DNA from: Podarcis tiliguerta
Lineage: Eukaryota
Direction: 5' to 3' (one strand)
Length of the DNA stretch: 64,000 bases
NCBI GenBank assembly: GCA_965153285.1
Contig: OZ229113.1
Shown here: piece by piece, positions 8,263 through 64,000 of the stretch
Layout of the letters: each line of letters opens with the position of its first letter
Numbering within the stretch: the stretch's first letter is position 1
The notes under the pieces: generated by a model
Seen by the model: the letters and a program-made list of their open reading frames with translations, nothing else
Database searches by the model: none
Told to the model about the DNA's origin: nothing
Translations under genes and position numbers: made by a program

Positions 8263-8509
8263 TGTTGTTGTTGTTGTTGTTGTTGTTTAGTCGTTTAGTC
8301 GTGTCTGACTCTTCATGACCCCATGGACCAGAGCATGCCAGGCACTTCTGTCTTCCACTGCCTCCCGCAGTTTGGTCAAACTCATGCTGGTAGCTTTGAG
8401 AACACTATCCAACCATCTCGTCCTCTGTCGTCCCCTTCTCCTTGTGCCCTCCATCTTTCCCAACATCAGGGTCTTTTCCAGGGAGTCTTCTCTTCTCACG
8501 AGGCGGCCA
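8263..8509 (-). mobile_element. BovB-type RTE LINE 3' fragment
   Basis: Closely matches the 3' end of the copy at 35432 (RREDSLEKTLMLGKMEG...TRLND) and has the (AAC)n tail. Confidence 0.92.
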
Positions 8510-9699
8510 TGAGGAGGAAAACAAGGGGAAAAAATATTCTGAATCTCAGAAGCCAGAACAACAAGGGGGATCGCTGTGCAGTGAAAGCAGCAATCCCTCT
8601 TGCTGTTCTGGCTTCTGTGATAGCTGTGCAGCCTGCATTCGCTCCATAAGACGCACACGTTTCCCCTTACTTTTTAGGAGGGAAAAAGTGAGTCTTATAG
8701 AGCAAAAATTACGGTACATTCCATCTGAACAAATGCACTAGAGGAGACTCCTAGTTCTGATGGCTGACACTCAAGAGAGATCTCTACATAACCCCCAGCC
8801 ATCAGTCAGTCACTGGGTTATTCAGAAGAGATACACCTAACAAAGGAAGGTTCCCTGACCATCTTAAGGTCACTCTTAAGTTTTGGACGGAAGGGCCAAA
8901 GCAGAATGAAGCCTGCAGCTACAGCAATTCCTTGCAACAGTTGCCTTAAAAGGTGTTTGAAGGTAAATGGTCCTTCTAAGATACAGTTACACTGCAGGAA
9001 GCTTAGGGAGAATTGTTCTGTTCTTGTGTGAATTAATATTCTCTCAGTGTCTGTTGCTCTCTGCCTCTGGACACTGTAAATATGAGTGTCCCTGAGAAGG
9101 AGCCTAACTGCTTCAGCCCCTAGGTAGTTTCTCTTCACAGAATAAGTACTATGTCCCTGGGGTTTGCCAGCTGAGTCCTTCTGTTTCCTTTGCCAACTCC
9201 CATTTTCCCAAGTAGGTTATGATGAATGATGCCCTGAGGTATGCCATACGTTTGAGGGAGCCTTTAGAAGCAGATTTTCTGTTCAAGGATGGAGCAATAA
9301 ACTGCAATGATTCTGGCACCTTGCACCTAGTGCATGCCAATTCAGATGCACAACTGACCCCACTAGAAAATACTCCCAAGTAGCTATGTATATAGCACCT
9401 AGGCTGTGACCCAAAACACACATACAGGAGAGCGTGTCCTATTGAAGAAAGAGGGATTTGCTCTTGAATAAATATGTATAAGAATAAGGTGCTCTAAAGT
9501 CTCTCTACATTTGCTTAAGAATGAGCCCCAATTGTACATAGTGAGGTCTACTACAGAGTAAATGTGAGCCAGAAAGCAGACTTCATGTCAGCTTGCAGTG
9601 GCCCTGCAGCAACTAACCATCACCTTTCCCCAAGAATGTTGTACAGGAAAATTAGGAAGTTCCATAGCAAAAGTGTGATCAGTGATTCCAACCAATCAA

Positions 9700-20324: not shown

Positions 20325-20833
<509 letters not shown>

Positions 20834-22602: not shown

Positions 22603-22833
<231 letters not shown>

Positions 22834-24569
22834 TTATCAACAAAAGCCAGAGCACCGGTTTGTAAACAGCTGTCTTCTGTCTAACAGTTCTTCCATATGA
22901 CAATATTGGATGGTTCAAACAAAAGAAATGAACTGAGGACTTTTTTTTGTACTCATAAGCCACTGGCTGGGAACAAAAGCATACACACCATGCTTTTAAA
23001 ATGCTCCACTCCAAAGAATCCTCAGAAATGTTTACCCCCAGGAGAGTTACAATCCCCAGCACCCTTAACTACAGTTCCCAGGTCTTGGGGGGGGGGGGAG
23101 GCAGGCTGTGCTATAAAATAAGGTGAGGACAGAGTTAGAGCCAAGCAAGACCCATCCGCTTGAAGCTTATTTCTAAGCTGAGATGCTCTCTGGTATCCAA
23201 GCTTCGTAGACTTTGTTCATGATGTTTCAAGTTGTGCTAGTACCCTGCCTACCTACCCAGTTGTTGGTGAAGAAGAGTGACCTTCCATGGTCCAGCTCAA
23301 TCCATGTTGTGGCCCCACGTGGATGCTGCTGGAAAATGCTTCCCCATAAGAGTTTATTTATGGAGCACCTATTATGTGGAGCATTTATTCTGGAGCACTG
23401 CACAACTTATGGGGGAATCCTCATGTCTCTGCCACACATTTTCAGTGACAATTAGCACTGACAAGGATTCTCTCCCATTGTTGTGGAGGAGCAATTAGTC
23501 TTTGCCCATCTAGTGCCCTCAAGAAGTTTTGGATTACAATGCCCATTGAAGGTGCCAATCACAATATTTGTGATTTGAATGGCAAATTGTGGGGTGGGGT
23601 GGGCTCGACCCCCTCAAATATTTTATTGGGGCTGCTGAAGGGACCTAGGAGTTGGCTCCTATGATTGCGATCCGAAACATCTGGAGGGCACGAGGTTGGC
23701 AAAGGCTACAGTATAGTTATTGTCACATGGAATCATTTCTGTGGCTTCCACTGGAGGACCTGGTCTCAAGGTCTGTATCATTTCCATGGAGAGGTCCTAC
23801 CCCAATAGCATGGGGATCTGCAGACTGCAGGCAATTACTGTGTCCTGAATTACTGTCTCCTTGTAGCTTTAGTGACGACATCACCAGGGCTGAACTCTAT
23901 GCAAATTTACTTTATGCAATCCACTACACACCTTAACACAGAATTTTCCTTTGATTCTAAAAATCCATAAATATGTGGATCTATGTGCACCAGTAGAAAG
24001 GAGATGAGTTTGCATAAAGGACTAATATACTACCAATTTTTGCACCTGCTGAATAGATGAAGAGTTGTTCAACTCTACCAAGCACACTTAAGGAGCTCCA
24101 GACTGTAGAGAGATTATATGTGGTATGGATCTTGCAACAGAATTTACTCGAGGCGAGATGTATATTTTTGCTGTGAGGAAAAACCTAGGTTAAAAGCTGA
24201 ATATGCTGGCTGTAGTCTGGTTTAAAATAAATAAATCAAGTCACTCACTAAAACTTAGGGTCTCATTTAGGGGTAAGCAGGCACCAAATGAGAGCAAGAA
24301 ATATATATGAAAGCGTCATTCTTTTCCTCAAAGAACAACATCTGGCTTCCCAAAACTGGCAAGGCCTTAAAGTTCTGCATCCTTTGAGTCCAGGTCTTTC
24401 CATCTGAGATCTACTAGGGAATCTCTTCTTGAGATTGGTGCTTCCTAGCAAAGACCTGCAGTGGCTGTCCCAAAAGCTGGTTCCATGGAGCCTGGCACCC
24501 TATCCCAAGTAAGGTGACCAACATGCAGAAGCAGTCCTCTGCATCATGCTCACCCTACTGAAAGCAACA

Positions 24570-24790
24570 CATTATTTCTTTATTGTCTTTCCTCCAAGGA
24601 GGCCAAGTTGGCATGCATAGCTCTCCCCACTCCCATTTTATCCTCACAACCACCCTGCAATGTAGGTTAAACGGAGAGTGAGCAATCGGCTTAAGATCAC
24701 CCAACGAACTTCACGGCTATGCGGGGATTCGAATTCCCGTCTCCCAGGTCTTAATCCAACACTCTGACCACCACACCACACTGGCTCCTT
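24570..24790 (-). mobile_element. CORE/MIR-like tRNA-derived SINE (relatives at about 28225-28410 and 40615-40745, plus strand)
   Basis: tRNA-like head gagccagtgtggtgtggtggtcagagtgttggatt...ttcgaatcccc and the core motif gggtggttgtgaggataaaatggg. Confidence 0.65.
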
Positions 24791-25657
24791 TGATTTCCAA
24801 CAAGCATATTGCAGGCAGTATCCATGCATGATGTGGTTTTGGATTTTGGACCAATTTGATTTCAGTCCCCAGTGAAGAGCAGAAGCAGCCCTCGCTGTGA
24901 GCTTCACATCATCCCGAACCTTCCACCTTCTCACCAGTTGTTGCATGGTTTAAAATAAAAATGGCATATTATTTATAGGTTGTGTGGTGCTGTGTGTGGG
25001 GGGGGGTGTTGTTTTTTTCTTTTTAAGAAGTAATTGCAAAGGGGGGGACGAGGCAGGAGCAAAATATGCAAACTGTGAAATTCTTCACGGGTCTATGCTT
25101 GTTATTTTCAGATCCCACAGCTCTGCGGAAGGACAGAACATCTTGGAAATCCGTTCACAAGTAACCCCGATTACAGGCCTCCTGCGAGCTTGATGAAGCC
25201 CAGAAAATCCATAGCTGACTGATGCTTCCCCTGTGTAAAATCGGATTTTTGTATTTTGCTAATCCCTGGTTACAATCTGTGTCCTGCTCTTTGTGATCCA
25301 CCCTGCAATCACAACCCAGCCCGCACAGATGTAACCTGGGACGTTAGCAAGGGGGGAAAGAAAGCAGAAGACGGGGAGGGGGAGAAAGAAAGGGGAAAAA
25401 GCAAACCTATTGATGTTGCAAACCAACATTTTATTTGCTTAAACCTTTGCAAACCTTAAGGGAGGCGGTGCCCCCGGGCACTAACATTTTGATTTCTGCT
25501 ACGAATCTTGCTGCTTCCTTGAGGCTGAAGCTGTTTGCCCCCCTTCGCAAGTGCCCTGCAGAGTAGTGGCCGAGTTGAGTCCCCTGGCACCCTGGAGCGC
25601 CCACCGCTCGCTTGGGATTGTGGTTTTGCTCCGAGGAGCCGCGCACGACCCTAGGAG

Positions 25658-25758
25658 ATGCCTCGGCACGCGCTCTGGATCTTCCTCCTGGCGATTCTGA
25701 AGGCGAGAGGGGAGCTGCCTTTCATCGCAGAGAACAATGCCGCGATGATGGTGAACTG
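25658..25758 (+). CDS. GABRB3: Putative first coding exon encoding a signal peptide, antisense-nested in GABRA5; probably a distal alternative first exon of GABRB3
   Basis: ATG at 25658 has G at -3 and an in-frame TAG two codons upstream. Encodes MPRHALWIFLLAILKARG-ELPFIAENNAAMMVN and ends at the donor CTG|gtaaga (phase 2). The GABRB3 assignment is inference from cluster synteny, strand and phase, not from a search. Confidence 0.55.
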
Positions 25759-26924
25759 GTAAGAAACTCGGCCGCCTGCTGCTGCTGCTACCTGCCCGCC
25801 CTGGTTTCATCGTGCAGGTGCTCCTCTAACTTCCACCATCCCTCCTCCCCTGCCCCAAACAAAACGAAAGCTTTTTGACTTGTGGATCGGTGCGCGCTTG
25901 TTTTGCGGAGCCGTGGATGTGAGGTTTGGGGGGAATCGGTGCGATCTTAGCTTTGATCAGACAATTGCCAGGTTTGTGGCGCTCCGCGCGAAGTTCCGTT
26001 CCGCCGCCGCCCCTTCCTCCTCGCCCACCCACCCCTTACTGTCGCCCTTTGGATTTCAAAAGCAGCCCGCTGGGCTCTCGACGGGTCGCCGCTTGGGAAG
26101 AGCTGCGGGCGCCTTTGCTGATGCGAACGAGGCAGCTTGGAGCTGTGCCATCGCTTCTCCTTCCCATTAGCCCCGTGTCTGCCTTTGTCTCCGTGAAGGG
26201 ATCCCTTAAAAATAGCCCTTCCCCTGATCGAACAGGCAGCTCCTCCGCCCCACCCCGGATCAGCCCCGGGGGACCCTGCTGGTTTTCCTCCGGAGGTCTG
26301 CGCCACCACCCCGGGGACAAAGGAGCCCCGCGTTTCCTTCGGCGGCGTCTCCCCCGATGGGCGCAGCGTGCGGCCCCCTCGCTCCCTCCGCCCCGGGCGA
26401 GGTGCTTAGTTTCTAATTACCGCACAACGCCGTTCCCAGCAGCGAAGGCGAGGCCGTTATGTAACCTGTTGCAGCCCCTCTGTCTGCCGCCCCCATGTGA
26501 CTCCCGGACCTCGGTCCGGGGCCGCGGCCCTCCCTCCTCCGCCCCCTCCGAACGCGCCGCAGCCAATCGCCGGCCAGGATTGCCCTGACATAGAACCCCG
26601 AGCCAGGCCGGGAGCGGGGGAGGGGGGGTCTCACGTGGGTGGCTGGGCGCGGGATTAAAGCTTCTTTAGTTCCCTAATGCTGCCACATCTGGCGCCTCCA
26701 CTTCCAGTTAGGGAGGAAATGGGAGAATCCTTCGGGTTAGCGCCTCCTTTGCAGCCACGTGGTCCTTCGGACACGCTGCAAAGCCAGGCAACAGCTGCCA
26801 CTTCCTCCCCCCCCCTCTCTACCCCGCCCGCCTCCAAATGCGTTTCATCAAACAAATCATTTTAAAGCTCGAGAGAGAGAGAGGGAGAGATCAAAACGCG
26901 TAGGCGGTTGTTCGCCTCCTGCAG

Positions 26925-27118
26925 GAGGGGAATAAGCCGGCACGAGCGAAAGCAGCCTCTGCAAAACGCGGGGGAAGCTGCGGGCGCCTCGTCCCCGGTT
27001 CCCCTCGAGGGCCTTCCTTTCCTTAGCGCCCAAGTGTCGGACTATGCTGCTGCTGCTGCTGTTGCCGCAGAAGATTTGGCCTTGGTGGAGCAGCTGCACG
27101 AAGGCAGCCATCCAACAG
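26925..27118 (+). CDS. Putative second exon of the nested antisense transcript
   Basis: Acceptor ttcgcctcctgcag| (alternative ccttcctttccttag| at 27027) is in frame with the 25658 exon. Encodes (W)RGISRHERKQPLQNAGEAAGASSPVPLEGLPFLSAQVSDYAAAAAVAAEDLALVEQLHEGSHPT. Candidate donor CAG|gtgcag; otherwise the frame stops at 27141. Confidence 0.4.
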
Positions 27119-29231
27119 GTGCAGCTTTCCCCTGGTTGTAGAGATGTGCCTCTTGGATTTGTGCTCATGCAGCTGTTAGAGACAGGGTGGAAAATATGGC
27201 AAGTTCAAGAGGTATTCGAGGATTGATCTATGCTGCTTGCTAGGTGTGTCCTGTATTCAGGACATGGACAAAGAATAGCATTTCCTTTGGATTGCTAGGT
27301 TGCTGTCACTTTTAGAGCAGGAGTGGGGAACTGTGGGGCCCTTTGGATGTTGCTGAACCTCAACTCTCATCAGCTTCAGCTGATAGGGCCCGTGGGAACT
27401 GTAGTTCAACAGTATCTGGCAGGCCAAAGGTTCCCTATCTCTGTGTTTCCCCCCACTGAACATAGTCCCATAGACTAAGCTCCTTTATCACCACAATACC
27501 TATAGCTGCCTTTGCGTACAGACCCAAGCTTTTCATACCTTTTCACTCTGTATTAATGAAATGAGAATCACTACGGTCTCATGCACATGGGTAGCCAGGC
27601 ACGGACGGTAGATTGGAATCCTCCTCCACACACCTAAAAGAGTGTGTGGTGTAGGCTAAGCGGCACATTCATCCCTAGATGTGTGATGGCCCAAATCGAA
27701 CACAAGAAAAAAGCATGCAAAATCAGGGAGTCTTTGCATGACACACTTGTGTCACACCTATATGGTAGAGAAAGGCTGAAAATGCATGTGGCATTTTGGA
27801 TCCTGGACACTGTCCGAGCATGAATTGGGCATACCACAACCTGACTGCATGCTCACAGTCATTAAAGCCACTGAATTGGTGGCGCACACATGCAGTGTTC
27901 TCACTTGAGCACTGCAGTATCCAGTGGTGACTTGCATGGGGGAACGAGGCACCACAGGTCAAGCGTTTCTGTATCAGCTTCTCCTCCTGCAGGGATGGGG
28001 AGCATGTAGTTCTCTCTAGAGGCTGTTGAACTCTTGACTCTCATCAGCCCCAGACAACATGGGGCTGGGAGTCTGGGATGATGGAAGCTGTTGTCCACCA
28101 AAATGGGAAGAGCTGCAGTTCCCTATTCCTGTCACTAGGCTTCTCAGTGGGTTCTGCTCAAGCAAATGGTATATATGCATGCTTGAGCAAGTATTGCCTC
28201 CTTTTCCAACCCACACCCGAACAAGGCAGCAGTGTGCAGTGGTTAGAATGCTGGGTTCTAATGCCCAGTTAGCCATGAAGCTTGCTGAGTGACCTTGGGG
28301 GCCCATCACATCCTCTCAGCCTAACCCACCTCCCAGGGTTGTTGTGAAAAATTAATGGCGAGGGGGAGAATGCTTGAGCTCCTTGGAGCAACGCTGGAAT
28401 ACAGATGCAATGATACATAAATATCATGGGCAAGGGAGCACCAATTATTTAATCCACACTCACTGTGAGAACAAAAGAGGGACCTTAAAAATGTGCCTGA
28501 AATTTCCAGAAGTAAGCTTCTCATTTTCCACATTGACTAAAACATCGGAGGTCCAGGTGGCTTCAGTGCTAGGAGTGCTTTCTACCAGCTTGGGCTGAGG
28601 TGCCACCCACAGCCATTCATATAATTTAGGTACAGTGGTTCATGCCTTGGTATCCACAATACTTGATTATTTCAATGCACTTCAGTCTGCCCTTGGAGTT
28701 GATCCTGAAGCTGCAGCTGGTGCTGAATGCAGCTGCTAGATTGCTATGTGGAAAAGACTACTATTATCATGTAACACCTTTGTTCAGGGAATTGCAGTGG
28801 CTGCCAATATGCTACCAGGCCAAGCTCAATGTTTTATTTTTGGTACATGCAGTAACATCCTCTGCATCTCAAGACCAGGTAACCTGAGAGACCAGCTCTC
28901 ACTCCACACCACTGTTAGACCACAACAGTCCACAACTGCTGACAGTATCCCATGGCTATGTGGGTCAGTTGGCTTTCAGTGTCGTTGCACCGTGTGTTTT
29001 TTTAATGGTGCAATACCAAGATAGGAAAAAAACCTGATTTTTTTTCTAGCTTGGTATTGTTTTTGAATTTGTCCACAACCAGCATTTTGAATCTGCCTGA
29101 CTCTTGTTTCATTCTGATATTCTAATGCTTCTGTGATGTGTTACTTAGATGTTTTGATGTTCAGGAATCTAAACCATTTGCAAAAATAAACACATGAGTT
29201 GCCAAAAACAGCATCCCTTCTCCCTCCTCAC

Positions 29232-29375
29232 CTGTACTGGTACTGATGTTCTCAGAATCGACAGTTTGCCCTATCAAGTGATACTGGTTGAGCCTTGAAC
29301 CGTCTTCTGCTACTACCACGGATGCAGCTGGGCTGTGAGTCCACACATAGATCACTTCGGAATTGGGATAAGCAT
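29232..29375 (-). CDS. GABRA5: GABA-A receptor alpha-5, internal coding exon (144 bp, loops F/C region)
   Basis: Encodes (Y)[47 protein letters not shown]; YPNSEV and ENISTST are alpha-5 type. Acceptor ttttgccag; donor CAG|gtgagg; phase 1/1 fits both neighbours. Confidence 0.96.
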
Positions 29376-31976: not shown

Positions 31977-32332
31977 AAGGTTAAGGTAAAGGTACCCCTG
32001 CCCGTACGGGCCAGTCTTGACAGACTCTAGGGTTGTGCGCCCATCTCACTCAAGAGGCCGGGGGCCAGCGCTGTCCGAAAACACTTCCGGGTCACGTGGC
32101 CAGCGTGACATCGCTGCTCTGGCGAGCCAGAGCCGCACACGGAACGCCGTTTACCTTCCCGCTAGTAAGCGGTCCCTATTTATCTACTTGCACCCGGGGG
32201 TGCTTTCGAACTGCTTGGTTGGCAGGCGCTGGGACCGAGCAACGGGAGCGCACCCCACCGCGGGGATTCGAACCGCCGACCTTTCGATCGGCAAGCCCTA
32301 TGGCTTTTACCCACAGCGCCACCCGCGTCCCC
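31977..32332 (-). mobile_element. Sauria SINE (young, CpG-rich subfamily)
   Basis: Full length with intact CpGs; 13-bp TSD ATAACTAATAATA at 31964-31976 and 32333-32345. Confidence 0.92.
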
Positions 32333-33443
32333 ATAACTAATAATAGTATGACTGTAATTCAGGAAAACAAGTTTTTGGTACTAATTTGATATTTCTCGAA
32401 AGAGTTATTCGTACCAGCTGCAATTTTTATTTTATTTTAAAGGATATTCAAGGGACATAAAGAGGGGGTGCAATATGTAATAGCCACAATATATAACAGC
32501 CAGATCCCTTGGTTTTTGCATTCATGGTATTCTTCCCCTCCCCCACCCCACAATAATAAATAAGTGAAGTGAGCACCTTAAGGTGAAAGGATTATGGCTA
32601 TGAGGCAAAACAAGGCTATAACAATGTTCCCAAATGTCTAATTTATTAACAAATTAATGATTCCTGTTTTAAACCATTACAGTATAGGGAAACAAACATT
32701 GGGGAAGAAGAATACATAATTCCTACTCTTGTAACATGGAACACTTATTGGATGGATATGAAGTTGCCTGCAGGGAGTGGGGGAATAAGCATTTCAAATG
32801 GCAATAACATTGCCAAATTGGAACAGTATTCCAATTTGACATATTTTGGCCTGAGTACCACTACTGGTGCGATTCGCACATCCAATGTGACTTTTACAAT
32901 GCAGACTTGGCTTGCAAGAGTAGCCCCCCTCCTCAGTTTCCCTGGATCCCCAGTACTTTCTGTCCCCCTTCCTTCCTTCCTCTTGCTCATTGATGTTAAT
33001 ATTTATAGTGGAATATTTATTTTTGGATGCAACATTTGATCTGGAATGAATCTGAAAATTGATTCTGAACTGCGCGTTGACAGTGGCTGCATAATTATCT
33101 CTCTAGGGGAAGCAGCCAGAATCGGTTATTTCGGCTGCTATTGTTTTTTCCTTTGTGCGCTCTCCTGCTACGCTTGCCGACTTATTGTCACTATAAATCT
33201 CGCTTTTTAAAAGGGCCCTAATGGCTGAGCATTGAAAGAGGATGATTTTGAAGCCACATCTTTAGAAACTGAAACTATACAGGGCAGTTTTAAATAGACT
33301 GGAGCTCTTGTAAGCATGACAACAGAGCAGTGACTTCCAAAGAACAATAAAGTATGGGAGTTCAATTGGGTAGAGTCCAGCATCCAAAATCATGTTACTT
33401 TGTTGCAGGTTTAACCACAAGTGTTGGTTCTAAATAAGGTTGC

Positions 33444-35431: not shown

Positions 35432-36865
35432 TAAAATTTTAAAAGATGATGCTGTTAAGGTGCTACACTCAATATGCCAGCAAGTTTGGAAAACTCAGCA
35501 GTGGCCAGAGGATTGGAGAAGGTCAGTCTACATCCCAATCCCAAAGAAGGGCAGTGCTAAAGAATGCTCCAACTACCACACAATTGCACTCATTTCACAC
35601 GCTAGCAAGGTTATGCTTAAAATTCTTCAAGGAAGGCTCAAGCAGTATGTGGACCGAGAACTCCCAGAAGTGCAAACTGGATTTAGAAGAGGCAGAGGAA
35701 CCAGAGACCAAATTGCAAACATGCGCTGGATTATGGAGAAAGCTAGAGAGTTCCAGAAAGACATCTACTTCTGCTTCATTGATTATGCAAAAGCCTTTGA
35801 CTGTGTCGACCACAGCAAACTATGGTAAGTTCTTAAAGAAATGGGAGTGCCTGACCACCTCATCTGTCTCCTGAGAAATCTCTATGTGGGACAAGAAGCT
35901 ACAGTTAGAACTGGATATGGAACAACTGATTGGTTCAAAATTGGGAAAGGAGTACGACAAGGCTGTATTTTGTCTCCCTACTTATTTAACTTATATGCAG
36001 AATTCATCATGCGAAAGGCTGGGCTGGATGAATCCCTAGCCGGAATTAAGATTGCTGGAAGAAATATCAACAACCTCAGATATACAGATGACACAACCTT
36101 GATGGCAGAAAGTGAGGAGGAATTAAAAAACCTTTTATTGAGGGTGAAAGAGGAGAGCGCAAAATATGGTCTGAAGCTCAACATCATAAAAACGAAGATC
36201 ATGGCCACTGGTCCCATCACCTCCTGGCAAATAGAAGGGGAGGAAATGGAGGCAGTGAGAGATTTTACTTTCTTGGGCTCCATGATCACTGCAGATGGTG
36301 ACAGCAGCCACGAAATTAAGAGACGCCTGCTTCTTGGGAGGAAAGCAATGACAAACCTAGACAGCATTTTAAAAAGTAGAGACATCACCTTGCCAACAAA
36401 GGTCTGTATCGTTAAAGCTATGGTTTTCCCAGTAGTGATGTATGGAAGTGAGAGCTGGACCATAAAGAAGGCTGATCGCCAAAGAATTGACGCTTTTGAA
36501 TTATGGTGCTGGAGGAAACTCTTGAGAGTCCCATGGACTGCAAGAAGATCAAACACATCCATTCTTAAAGAAATCAGCCCTGAGTGCTCACTGGAAGGAC
36601 AGATCGTGAAGCTGAGGCTCCAATACTTTGGCCACCTCATGAGAAGAGAAGACTCCCTGGAAAAGACCCTGATGTTGGGAAAGATGGAGGGCACAAGGAG
36701 AAGGGGACGACAGAGGACAAGATGGTTAGACAGTGTTCTCGAAGCTACAAACATGAATCTGACCAAACTGTGGGTGGCAGTGGAAGACAGGAGTGCCTGG
36801 CGTGCTCTGGTCCATGGGGTCACGAAGAGTCAGACACGACTGAACGACTAAACAACAACAACAAC
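35432..36865 (+). mobile_element. BovB-type RTE LINE, 5'-truncated (reverse transcriptase domain to 3' tail)
   Basis: ORFs 35460-35828 and 35841-36851 are one frame broken by a single TAA. RT motifs FIDYAKAFD, GVRQGCILSP and LRYTDD; BovB C-terminus RRRGRQRTRWLD...TRLND; (AAC)n tail; 11-bp TSD ACCACTGTACT at 35421-35431 and 36866-36876. Confidence 0.95.
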
Positions 36866-60467: not shown

Positions 60468-61796
60468 CCCATTAAGAACATATCTTAAGCAGTTGCTTGG
60501 GTGGATGAACCAGGCATCATCGCTCAAAGACAGGCAGGAAGAAAACCTCCAATGTACTAAAAGATGCTTGGGTTAATAACATCTGGAGCATTGCTCTATC
60601 AGAACGCCCCACATACCATCAGCAAATAATCAAAGGCATGTAAAAAAATACATTTAACACAATTTGGTCTCCTTTTTTTCTCTTTTATTGAAGAACAGGA
60701 TATTTTAATACCATAATCATCACAGAGGTATCTGTGGAGGGGATATATTGATTGTAAATGTCTAGTAAACCAGATCGGTAGTTGGGTTCCTACTGAGAGT
60801 ATTTGATGAACCAACATGACAAGGATGAGGGATTGAGGATAGGAGTGATCATTCTGTGGTATTATGGCAGTGGGCAAAGCTGAAGTGTAACTTTTTAATA
60901 AGTGTATTTTTAATAATAATAATAATAATAATAATAATAGGCAGAACTGTCCTAACCTCTCACCCAACATTTTCCCATGGAGCCAGCTATCATGGGCAAC
61001 TGTGTGTCTCTAAAGGCAGTGCAGCCCAGTCTGATGCTGAACTCGGGACGGGAAGGATTAGGAAACTTGATATCGATTCGGAGTTGGCACATGTCTTTTC
61101 CTGCCCTTTTGTCTGCTCAACACAGCAGGTCATCCCAAAGCAACCAAGATGTGTGCCTTTAGCTCTTGTGTGCATGTGTTTTGTTGTGTTTTAAAAAGTG
61201 GGGGCACCAGATTGGCACACAAACAGGGAGGTGTCCTGTCCTGTCTCAGCTCAATGGAAGCCTGCTGTACAGTCTTTGGGTACAGCCATGTTACATAAAG
61301 CAGAGTGGGGTCACAACAGGCGAGGCTGTTGTTGTCAGCACCTTGGACAGCACCCTGCTAGCTAGAGGATTCCCCCAGAGAGAAAATTCCTTGTCTCAGC
61401 AAGGCACAGAAGCCTTCTGAGGTGACCAGAAGGCTGGCCAGCCTGGTCCTGCTGCCAGCCTCCCAGCCCAGCCTGGGCCTTATTATGCAGCCACTAGCAA
61501 CTATGCTGTGGTGTTTGTATAGAAACATATGAAGCTGCCTTGTATCCAATCAGGCAGACCATTGGCCCATGTTCCTCAGTGCTGTCTTCACTGTCTGGTA
61601 GTGGATCGTTTTAAGACTAGGGACATTCCCAGTGCTACCTGAAGGTGCCAGGACTGAACCTGGAAGCTTCTGCATGGAAAGCAGATGTTTTATCACTGAG
61701 CTACAGCCTTTATTTTATTAGTTATTATTATTATTCATTCGATTTATATACAGTCCTTCATTGAAAGATCTCAGGGCAGTTCACAGGATAAAAATA

Positions 61797-63280: not shown

Positions 63281-64000
63281 GTGACCATAATGGTTATGCA
63301 GAAAATTACAGCAATTGTGCATTATGGAATGGAAAATTTAAGTGCTGACCTTGTTACAAGTCTGCAATACTTGTATATGCTACTGAAATAGATGTTAGAA
63401 GAGGAGTGCTGAATTTAATTGAATGAACTCAGTTCAGTTCACTTACATCAAATCTAAATTTTCAGTTTCCTTACTGACTGGCGTCCAACATTATCTAGGC
63501 TTTAAAATTTATTGAATGATTTTAATACCCCCACTCATATATTTCTATATGCATTTTAATTTTTATGTACATTTTTAAATGAAAAGTATACGTACTTGCA
63601 TCCACAGAAGCTGGAATTTCAATTCTGAATCTCATAAAAATAACCTCCAGGGCTGCTAAACCATGTAGTTAGTCAAGCCCAAAACAGGTTTTGGGGGGGG
63701 GTCACACTAAGCTTTATTATTGAACAAAGTCAGCCTGAATTTAAAAACAATGGAACAATTCTCAAGCATAACAAGGGCTTCCTCAATTTGCACCATGGTT
63801 ACTAAATGTGAGGGAAAGCAGCTTGCTAATATACACAGAGAGAGAGACATCACACTTTGAAACCTGACATTTTACAGCTAGCAGCGATTTCTCTAAGGAC
63901 AAACCGGTGCATGTTATCATTACTTTTTCTGCCAGTGGAAAATATCACAGGAACACTCATGATGAAAGAAGTGATGTTCTAAATGCAGCCCAGCTCTGCA

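What the first reader, a model, noticed from the sequence alone, without database searches (positions are those of the whole stretch)
25658..25764. Hidden signal-peptide exon antisense inside GABRA5: candidate distal first exon of GABRB3
Seen: a 101-nt plus-strand coding segment, too short for the ORF track, sits in an intronic CpG island. It has an in-frame upstream stop, encodes MPRH-ALWIFLLAIL-KARG|ELPFIAENNAAMMVN (basic n-region, 10-residue hydrophobic core, A-x-G cleavage site) and ends at a strong donor CTG|gtaaga in phase 2. Known: in the GABRB3-GABRA5-GABRG3 cluster GABRB3 is head-to-head with GABRA5, so it should lie on the plus strand beyond base 64000. Its alternative signal-peptide exons join exon 2 (S|VNDPGNM) in phase 2. 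From memory, unverified: human annotation includes a long GABRB3 transcript starting inside GABRA5 with a similar N-terminus. Inference: this is a distal beta-3 promoter and leader buried in the alpha-5 gene. Everything from 25.6 kb to the window end would then be transcribed on both strands, coupling two subunits that co-assemble (alpha5-beta3) through overlap or transcriptional interference, and giving a beta-3 isoform with a different N-terminus.
Basis: partly seen in the sequence, partly recalled or inferred. Interest (0 to 1): 0.85.

Follow-up and report, generated by a model that had tools for sequence, protein, structure and literature searches.

The report
Unproven leader exon in GABRA5 CpG island
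A short signal-peptide-like reading frame followed by a splice donor does lie antisense in a CpG island inside the GABRA5 gene, but nothing I could run shows that it is spliced or joined to GABRB3, and the island looks more like a promoter centred about 1 kb further right.

Summary
There is an ATG at 25658, an in-frame TAG six bases upstream, 33 codons plus TG, and a CTG|GTAAGA donor at 25758/59. It lies at the left margin of a 1.5-kb CpG island in the 6.4-kb GABRA5 intron between exons 29375-29232 and 22796-22644 (minus strand).

The interpretation, a distal GABRB3 signal-peptide first exon, is neither shown nor excluded.

For it:
- It is the most leader-like of 32 ATG-ORF-plus-donor combinations in 128 kb.
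- Its donor is the only good plus-strand donor in 3.4 kb.
- No upstream ATG occurs in the 208 nt before it.
- Divergence from a sister species is locally low.
- A human cDNA (CR749803) documents a long GABRB3 transcript that crosses GABRA5.

Against it:
- Every contig that covers the site, from three studies and two species, runs unspliced through the donor at flat depth.
- No junction or loose end at 25758 was listed.
- The DNA just right of the exon has neutral GC skew (25759-26000), then is strongly C-rich on the plus strand (26001-26600). All seven GGGCGG boxes are on the minus strand.
- CCAAT and E-box motifs cluster at 26.56-26.76 kb.
- No protein database match was found, though the searches were badly limited.

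My odds:
- 0.35: promoter island centred near 26.6-26.9 kb, with the ORF fortuitous.
- 0.25: silent orphan island.
- 0.08: independent nested transcript.
- The rest is unassigned.

The parts
25658..25758 (+). Candidate segment: ATG, 33 codons plus TG. It has a basic n-region (MPRH), a 10-residue hydrophobic core (ALWIFLLAIL), and small residues at -3/-1 (A-R-G|E).
   Evidence: Sequence and translation. It has the highest hydrophobic score of 32 ORF+donor combinations. There is no ATG in the 208 nt upstream.
25652..25654 (+). In-frame TAG two codons upstream of the ATG.
   Evidence: context TAGGAGATGCC; G at -3, C at +4.
25759..25764 (+). GTAAGA, a putative 5' splice site. It is the only plus-strand donor scoring 4.5 bits or more between 24.8 and 28.2 kb.
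   Evidence: Contigs X1 rec6 (25617-25834), X3 rec20 (25690-25844) and X14 rec10 (25690-25978) run through it unspliced.
25501..27000 (.). CpG island in the GABRA5 intron. Its GC peak of 0.70-0.71 lies at 26.2-26.7 kb.
26001..26600 (-). Block that is C-rich on the plus strand and G-rich on the minus strand (G 159, C 244; skew -0.21; binomial p = 3e-5). All seven GGGCGG boxes of the island read on the minus strand.
   Evidence: profile.
26563..26761 (.). Core-promoter-like motif cluster: CCAAT at 26563, and CACGTG at 26632 and 26756. GC skew turns positive from about 26.9 kb.
   Evidence: These are motif matches only.
25430..25435 (-). AATAAA on the minus strand, followed by GU/U-rich sequence. 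It lies just beyond the left edge (25460) of the contig cover.
   Evidence: AATAAA occurs about once per 1.2 kb per strand, so this is weak evidence.
27044..27118 (+). Second leader-like ORF (MLLLLLLPQKIW...) on a CTG run. Its donor CAG|GTGCAG is weak and the phase is 0.
   Evidence: The exact ORF is not in the protein collection, and there is no Pfam hit.
22644..22796 (-). GABRA5 TM1 exon, the downstream boundary of the host intron.
29232..29375 (-). GABRA5 exon ([10 protein letters not shown]...STSTG), the upstream boundary of the host intron.

Best explanation
The 1.5-kb CpG island in the GABRA5 intron is a TATA-less promoter island with Sp1, CCAAT and E-box motifs. Its centre lies near 26.6-26.9 kb, about 1 kb to the right of the candidate segment.

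From there, a rightward plus-strand arm would run antisense through GABRA5 toward GABRB3. That arm would be the positional counterpart of the start of the long human GABRB3 cDNA. A leftward minus-strand arm would give a short unspliced RNA over 26.5-25.4 kb that ends at the AATAAA at 25435-25430.

In this reading the 101-nt ATG-to-GT segment lies antisense within the leftward arm and is a fortuitous ORF.

Shown: the island, its strand asymmetry, the motifs, and continuous unspliced contig cover over 25.46-26.4 kb.

Inferred: that the cover is RNA, the strands, the position of the start sites, and any link to GABRB3.
For: Strand asymmetry:
- Positions 26001-26600 have G 159 and C 244 (p = 3e-5).
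- All seven GGGCGG boxes read on the minus strand.
- Skew becomes positive from 26.9 to 27.4 kb.
- In human CGI promoters, G-skew is co-oriented with transcription downstream of the TSS (class I). 'Reverse' skew lies upstream of the TSS (class IV) (PMC3787257). Both patterns fit a plus-strand TSS near 26.6-26.9 kb. Neither fits one at 25.5 kb.

Motifs: CCAAT at 26563 and CACGTG at 26632 and 26756.

Contig cover:
- Contigs of X3 tile 25460-26281. Those of X1 tile 25617-25997.
- Those of X14 cover 25690-25978 and 26177-26388, plus 26829-26973, 27181-27325 and further right.
- Non-repeat intron to the left (23.99-24.58 and 25.17-25.36 kb) has no cover, so the island is enriched over its flanks.
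- Depth is flat or rising across the putative donor: 2.4-3 on the 'exon' against 6.2 and 4.5 downstream.

Splice and poly(A) signals: no minus-strand donor of 3 bits or more lies between 25.0 and 27.5 kb, and a minus-strand AATAAA sits at 25435. This is the arrangement expected of an unproductive upstream-antisense arm (U1/poly(A) logic, from general knowledge).

Precedent for a long GABRB3 transcript across GABRA5.
Against: - The runs are only guessed to be RNA, and contigs carry no strand. A GC-biased DNA library would give the same cover.
- GC-skew classes were defined in human. Skew is a tendency, not a rule: about a third of CGI promoters show none.
- The plus-strand donors to the right of the proposed centre are weak (27118 below 3 bits, 27243 at 3.9 bits).
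- The segment 25617-25834 differs from organism A at 1 of 218 positions, against 19 of 760 in the flanks (P about 0.03).
- No start site was mapped.
Confidence: 0.35

Rival explanations
1. A plus-strand promoter at about 25.45-25.65 kb drives a first exon ending at 25758. That exon encodes a cleavable signal peptide and splices, directly or through intermediate exons that keep the frame, to GABRB3 exon 2. The result would be a beta-3 subunit with a 16-residue N-terminal extension, and antisense transcription across most of GABRA5.
For: - It is the most leader-like of 32 ORF+donor combinations.
- G at -3 of the ATG, and no upstream ATG in 208 nt.
- It has the only good plus-strand donor in 3.4 kb.
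- The frame closes one codon past the donor.
- The phase equals that recalled for the GABRB3 exon 1/exon 2 junction (from memory, not tested).
- The contig cover begins at 25460-25617, where a start would be expected.
- Local divergence is low: 1/218 against 2.5%.
- GABRB3 is known to have two alternative signal-peptide first exons (PMC1934366) and a long human variant crossing GABRA5.
Against: - Three contigs from three studies cross the donor unspliced. No joint or loose end at 25758 is among those listed, and depth is not higher on the exon than on the 'intron'.
- GC skew is neutral over 25759-26000 and then strongly negative over 26001-26600, unlike any common CGI promoter class.
- phmmer of the peptide against 1.84 billion representatives found nothing. 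This is weak, because isoforms collapse into 50% clusters.
- The long human variant is described with two first introns, so no direct join to the core gene is documented.
Confidence: 0.2
2. The island is a silent or purely regulatory orphan CpG island, such as an enhancer, an insulator or a Polycomb target, inside the GABRA5 intron. The contigs over it are DNA from GC-favouring libraries, and the ORF and donor are chance.
For: - All 17 'RNA?' runs hold nearly the same small share of words (0.05-0.11) whatever the organism. That fits repeats or low-coverage DNA better than a brain-specific mRNA.
- Contig depths are 2-6 and the library type is not on record.
- Two alleles at 25814 appear at equal depth in X3.
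- No homolog or family was found for any ORF of the island.
Against: - Cover is concentrated on the island in X1, X3 and X14 and absent from neighbouring unique intron. Random low-coverage DNA would not do this.
- A CpG o/e of 0.8-0.85 over 1.5 kb means the DNA is kept unmethylated in the germ line, which usually goes with promoter activity.
- The position matches a documented human transcript start region only in outline.
Confidence: 0.25
3. The segment is the first exon of an independent nested transcript. This could be a small secreted protein or a lncRNA antisense to GABRA5, splicing to local exons such as 26925 or 27027 and not to GABRB3.
For: The frame stays open if 25758 is joined to 26925 (105 codons) or to 27027 (71 codons) (frame check in a script only). 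An acceptor-like cctcctgcag|G lies at 26924/25.
Against: - The 26866-27138 ORF has no homolog among 5.8 billion clusters and no Pfam family. It is alanine-rich, GC-driven sequence.
- No joint 25758>26925 or 25758>27027 was listed in four runs, although both sites lay inside the stretch.
- Open frames of this length are expected in 60-65% GC DNA.
Confidence: 0.08

Closest known systems
GABRB3 alternative first exons 1 and 1A (Kirkness and Fraser 1993, as summarised in PMC1934366)
   Same: These are short 5' exons. Each carries its own ATG and a dissimilar signal-peptide-like sequence, has its own promoter, and joins a common exon 2. The candidate has the same build: ATG, hydrophobic leader, donor.
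   Different: Exons 1 and 1A lie next to each other at the 5' end of GABRB3. The candidate would lie far upstream, inside the neighbouring GABRA5 gene on the opposite strand. It is 33 codons long against about 26 (recalled), and no junction to exon 2 has been seen.
Long human GABRB3 transcript, cDNA CR749803 (retina), described in bioRxiv 10.1101/409243
   Same: It is a GABRB3-sense transcript that starts beyond the intergenic region and runs across GABRA5 on the opposite strand. The island here has the right strand logic for such a start, and from my memory of gene coordinates a comparable distance from the GABRA5 3' end.
   Different: The evidence is a human cDNA only. The preprint describes two first introns, so there is an intermediate exon. 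From memory, unverified, its 5' exons are treated as untranslated in human RefSeq.
Divergent CpG-island promoters with an upstream-antisense RNA (PROMPT/uaRNA) and the GC-skew classes of Ginno et al. 2013 (PMC3787257)
   Same: The island is about 1.5 kb and TATA-less, with Sp1 boxes and CCAAT. Its strand skew changes sign near the motif cluster. One arm has a poly(A) signal and no splice donor.
   Different: No start sites or strands were measured here. The island is intragenic, in an intron of a neuron-specific gene, not at an annotated 5' end.

Membership tests
GABRB3 signal-peptide first exon (exon 1 / 1A type) | Spliced in frame to GABRB3 exon 2 | not testable with these tools
   GABRB3 lies outside the window. 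Phase compatibility rests on memory only.
GABRB3 signal-peptide first exon (exon 1 / 1A type) | Transcribed on the GABRB3 strand from a start site upstream of the ATG | tested here: inconclusive
   Contigs begin at 25460 (X3) and 25617 (X1), but they are unstranded and only guessed to be RNA. Downstream GC skew is neutral and then strongly negative.
GABRB3 signal-peptide first exon (exon 1 / 1A type) | The 5' splice site is used | tested here: not met
   X1 rec6, X3 rec20 and X14 rec10 run through 25758/59 unspliced, and depth is flat across it. Contigs drop rare forms, so this shows no support, not absence.
GABRB3 signal-peptide first exon (exon 1 / 1A type) | Encodes an n-h-c signal peptide with small residues at -3/-1 | tested here: met
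   MPRH / ALWIFLLAIL (mean Kyte-Doolittle 3.1 over 9 residues, the top of 32 candidates) / KARG|E. This is a heuristic only, because no SignalP was available.
GABRB3 signal-peptide first exon (exon 1 / 1A type) | ATG, frame and donor conserved in related species, or a protein with this N-terminus on record | tested here: inconclusive
   Organism A shows 1 difference in 218 nt over 25617-25834, against 2.5% in the flanks. Organism D shows at most 1 difference in 69 nt of the exon. phmmer found no hit, the exact ORF is not in the collection, and the peptide occurs in no paper.
CpG-island promoter | Length over 500 nt, GC over 0.5, CpG o/e over 0.6 | tested here: met
   25501-27000 has GC 0.59-0.66 and o/e 0.81-0.85.
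CpG-island promoter | Transcripts start within it | tested here: inconclusive
   Island-restricted contig cover appears in three studies. Neither the RNA nature nor the start sites are shown.
Long GABRB3 transcript crossing GABRA5 (CR749803 type) | Start inside GABRA5 on the opposite strand, with exons continuing into the GABRB3 core | not testable with these tools
   Position and strand logic fit. No spliced read, no neighbouring window and no permitted comparison with the human cDNA were available.

The most novel reading that the evidence does not exclude
The 101-nt segment is a genuine third signal-peptide first exon of GABRB3, 33 codons long. It would be driven by a promoter buried in a GABRA5 intron and used in this reptile lineage. 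It would yield a beta-3 subunit with a 16-residue N-terminal extension, and every such transcript would be read antisense through most of the gene for its assembly partner alpha-5.
Probability: 0.18. Interest if true: 0.55.

Novelty: new member of a known kind. Interest (0 to 1): 0.3.

Why it matters
If the island is the reptile counterpart of the start of the long GABRB3 transcript, then a distal beta-3 promoter inside alpha-5 would be old, shared by mammals and squamates. That would argue the antisense overlap of the two genes is maintained and not an accident of human annotation. It would also give a concrete handle on coordinated or mutually exclusive alpha-5/beta-3 expression in a locus tied to epilepsy, autism and Angelman/Dup15q phenotypes.

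If the leader ORF were also real, it would add a third beta-3 N-terminus.

As things stand, the sequence pattern is real but the biology is unproven. Alternative GABRB3 leaders and a GABRA5-crossing GABRB3 transcript are already on record for human.

Tried and rejected
- phmmer of the 33-aa peptide against 1.84 billion cluster representatives gave 0 hits. This is uninformative for isoforms, which hide inside 50% clusters.
I did not try to get round the limit.
- Exact look-up of the 34-aa ORF and of the 27044-27223 ORF: neither is in the collection.
No Pfam family was found for seven island ORFs.
- Paper searches found nothing for peptide words, nothing for 'within/overlapping GABRA5', and nothing relevant for transcript accession numbers.
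- The search of earlier findings held nothing on this locus.
- Sequencing runs: none is on record as RNA. The single read-laying run gave contigs only, so there is no strand, no start sites and no expression levels. 376 loose ends and 733 pieces were not shown.
- I left the GABRA5 exons out of the laid stretch on purpose, so there is no positive control for GABRA5 expression.
- The joined models (25758 to 26925 or 27027) were only checked for an open frame inside a script. A join to GABRB3 exon 2 was not built, because that exon is not in the window.
- I made no comparison with human sequence.
- I considered a scan of metagenome or bacterial genome contigs for the exon and dropped it as pointless for a vertebrate intron.

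Full report
**What is there.**
The plus strand reads TAG GAG ATG at 25652-25660. After the ATG come 33 sense codons (MPRHALWIFLLAILKARGELPFIAENNAAMMVN), then TG, then GTAAGA from 25759. The coding part is 101 nt, so an intron here would split a codon after its second base. If unspliced, the frame ends one codon later (..NW*).

**Setting.**
The window carries the 3' half of a GABA-A alpha subunit gene on the minus strand.
- The exons lie at about 51.6-51.7 kb, 29375-29232, 22796-22644 (with a GC donor) and 20682-20471. The last exon ends with TAA at 18994-18992.
- The 29.3-kb exon matches alpha-5 chains best among solved structures, 77.7 bits against 62 for alpha-1. The C-terminal exon carries the alpha-5-type ending.
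- The candidate therefore lies antisense in the 6.4-kb intron between the 29.3-kb and 22.7-kb exons, 6.7 kb from the GABRA5 stop codon.
- It sits at the left edge of the one clear CpG island in the window. The 500-nt windows from 25501 to 27000 have GC 0.59-0.66 and CpG o/e 0.81-0.85.
- A single 500-nt window at 32001-32500 also passes the thresholds and looks SINE-derived.
- No tandem repeat underlies the island. Read depth shows the segment is single-copy.

**Is it more than chance?**
I scanned both strands of the window for ATG-initiated frames of 18-80 codons that run into a donor-like GT.
- There are 32 such combinations. The candidate has the highest hydrophobic-core score, but a decoy at 18479-18326(-) is practically equal. 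The bare pattern therefore turns up about once per 64 kb.
- Lying in a CpG island, pointing toward GABRB3, and being in the one phase of three that is needed is unusual, a few per cent judged after the fact. A scan over very many windows will still meet such cases.
- Three small points favour the segment. G stands at -3 of the ATG. No ATG occurs in the 208 nt upstream. Its donor is the only plus-strand donor of 4.5 bits or more between 24.8 and 28.2 kb.

**Reads.**
No run holding this DNA is on record as RNA. Seventeen small runs guessed to be RNA hold 5-11% of the words, and six large runs hold 38-86% and are presumably genomic. I laid four of the small runs from four studies on 23000-28900.
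- Organism A differs from the window at about 2.5% of flanking positions, and organism D at about 6%.
- In organism A (X1, X3) and organism D (X14), contigs tile the island. X3 covers 25460-25624, 25690-26013 and 26052-26281. X1 covers 25617-25997. X14 covers 25690-25978, 26177-26388, 26829-26973, 27181-27325 and further right.
- Unique intron to the left (23.99-24.58 kb and 25.17-25.36 kb) is empty. The island is therefore enriched over its flanks in three studies, which random low-coverage DNA would not do.
- Three contigs (X1 rec6, X3 rec20, X14 rec10) run straight through 25758/59.
- Depth is 2.4-3 on the 'exon' and 6.2 and 4.5 further into the 'intron'.
- No joint or loose end at 25758 is among those listed. 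Neither 25758>26925 nor 25758>27027 appears, although both sites were inside the stretch.
- Limits: contigs carry no strand and drop rare forms, 376 loose ends were not shown, and contigs that resemble human DNA are removed silently. A contig spliced into the highly conserved GABRB3 exons could have been removed that way.
- The result is 'no support', not 'refuted'.
- One oddity: an 89-nt X3 contig (rec 21) ends exactly at 25759. It overlaps rec 20 and differs from it at a heterozygous site (25814), so I read it as an assembly bubble.

**Local conservation.**
Organism A differs from the window at 1 of 218 positions over 25617-25834, against 19 of 760 in the neighbouring contigs (Poisson P about 0.03). 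In organism D, at most one of eight substitutions falls in the 69 exon bases covered. This is a hint of constraint. It cannot tell a coding exon from a promoter element or from the other strand's transcript.

**The island itself.**
The compositional centre is not at the candidate.
- GC peaks at 0.70-0.71 between 26.2 and 26.7 kb.
- Positions 26001-26600 are strongly C-rich on the plus strand (G 159, C 244, p = 3e-5), and all seven GGGCGG boxes read on the minus strand.
- A CCAAT box (26563) and two CACGTG boxes (26632, 26756) cluster at the right end of that block. Skew turns positive from 26.9 to 27.4 kb.
- In human CpG-island promoters, G-skew is co-oriented with transcription downstream of the start (class I). 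'Reverse' skew, where present, lies upstream of the start (class IV) (PMC3787257). Either pattern places a plus-strand start near 26.6-26.9 kb, or a minus-strand start running left from about 26.6 kb.
- A plus-strand start at 25.5 kb would have neutral skew over 25759-26000 and then strongly reverse skew over 26001-26600, all downstream of the start. That fits no common class.
- On the minus strand there is no donor of 3 bits or more between 27.5 and 25.0 kb, and an AATAAA followed by GU/U-rich sequence sits at 25435-25430, just beyond the left edge of the contig cover. From general knowledge of promoter directionality, that is how an unproductive upstream-antisense arm looks.
- Counter-point: plus-strand donors to the right of the centre are weak (27118 below 3 bits, 27243 at 3.9 bits).
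- A second leader-like ORF (ATG 27044, MLLLLLLPQKIW..., phase 0) lies there on a CTG run.

**Databases.**
- The peptide found nothing among 1.84 billion cluster representatives. That library keeps one protein per 50% cluster, so an alternative N-terminus of a beta subunit would be hidden.
- The possible next exon (26866-27138) has no homolog. None of seven island ORFs has a Pfam family.
The only joining was a frame check inside a script.

**Literature.**
- PMC1934366 confirms that alpha and beta genes are head-to-head in each GABA-A cluster. It also confirms that human GABRB3 has two alternative first exons, 1 and 1A, encoding dissimilar signal-peptide-like sequences.
[quoted passage not shown] PMC1637111 lists CR749803 as GABRB3.
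As described, however, the distal exon does not join the GABRB3 core directly, and nothing I could read says it encodes a leader.
- From my own memory, unverified: the human and mouse GABRB3 gene ranges in public annotation start about 10-12 kb from the GABRA5 3' end, a position comparable to this island. I also recall that human RefSeq treats the distal exons as untranslated.
- I did not look at human sequence.

**Verdict.**
The interpretation cannot be decided with these tools, and I put it at about 0.2.

My best single reading (0.35) is a promoter island centred about 1 kb to the right. Its rightward arm may be the reptile counterpart of the long GABRB3 start. Its leftward arm produces the unspliced cover over the candidate, and the ORF is fortuitous.

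The other readings are:
- a silent orphan island covered by DNA contigs: 0.25;
- an independent nested transcript: 0.08;
- the remainder is unassigned.

**Known or new.**
Either way this belongs to known kinds: alternative GABRB3 5' exons, a GABRA5-crossing GABRB3 transcript, and intragenic CpG-island promoters. Interest is modest unless stranded RNA data show the junction.

Noticed in passing
window 20570-20623 (-): There is a full-length Rfam hit (RF01803, 'editing element of GABA-3 exon 9', 72.9 bits against a gathering score of 57) inside the GABRA5 TM2-TM3 exon. The ATA isoleucine codon of DWFIAV is present. The A-to-I editing hairpin known from GABRA3 therefore seems to be kept in this alpha-5 exon.
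   Followed up: no
window 22642-22644 (-): The GABRA5 TM1 exon (22796-22644) ends at a GC donor, G|GCAAGT. This is a GC-AG intron, judged from the reading frame into the next exon (20682).
   Followed up: partly
window 27044-27118 (+): A second ATG-leader-like ORF (MLLLLLLPQKIWPWWSSCTKAAIQQ) lies on a (CTG)6 run near the right edge of the island. It ends at a weak donor, CAG|GTGCAG, in phase 0. It is not in the protein collection and has no Pfam hit.
   Followed up: partly
window 25690 and 25759: Contig ends coincide. X3 rec20 and X14 rec10, from different species and studies, both end at 25690. X3 rec21 ends exactly at 25759, the first base of the putative intron. These are probably coverage drops and a heterozygosity bubble (SNP at 25814, CTG-run length difference), but this is not explained.
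   Followed up: no
window 20411-20469 (-), 61640-61710 (-): There are two tRNA-like Rfam hits (31.5 and 35 bits). Together with the high-depth pile-ups at 23.6, 24.6-24.8, 27.4 and 28.1-28.5 kb in all four runs, they point to tRNA-derived SINE copies scattered through the GABRA5 introns.
   Followed up: no
window 8290-8673 and 35981-36829 (-): There are long open frames (128 and 283 aa) with the look of LINE 3' ends. Related frames occur on both strands at 8.3-8.7 kb. I recall such sequence from BovB-type retrotransposons, but this was not tested.
   Followed up: no
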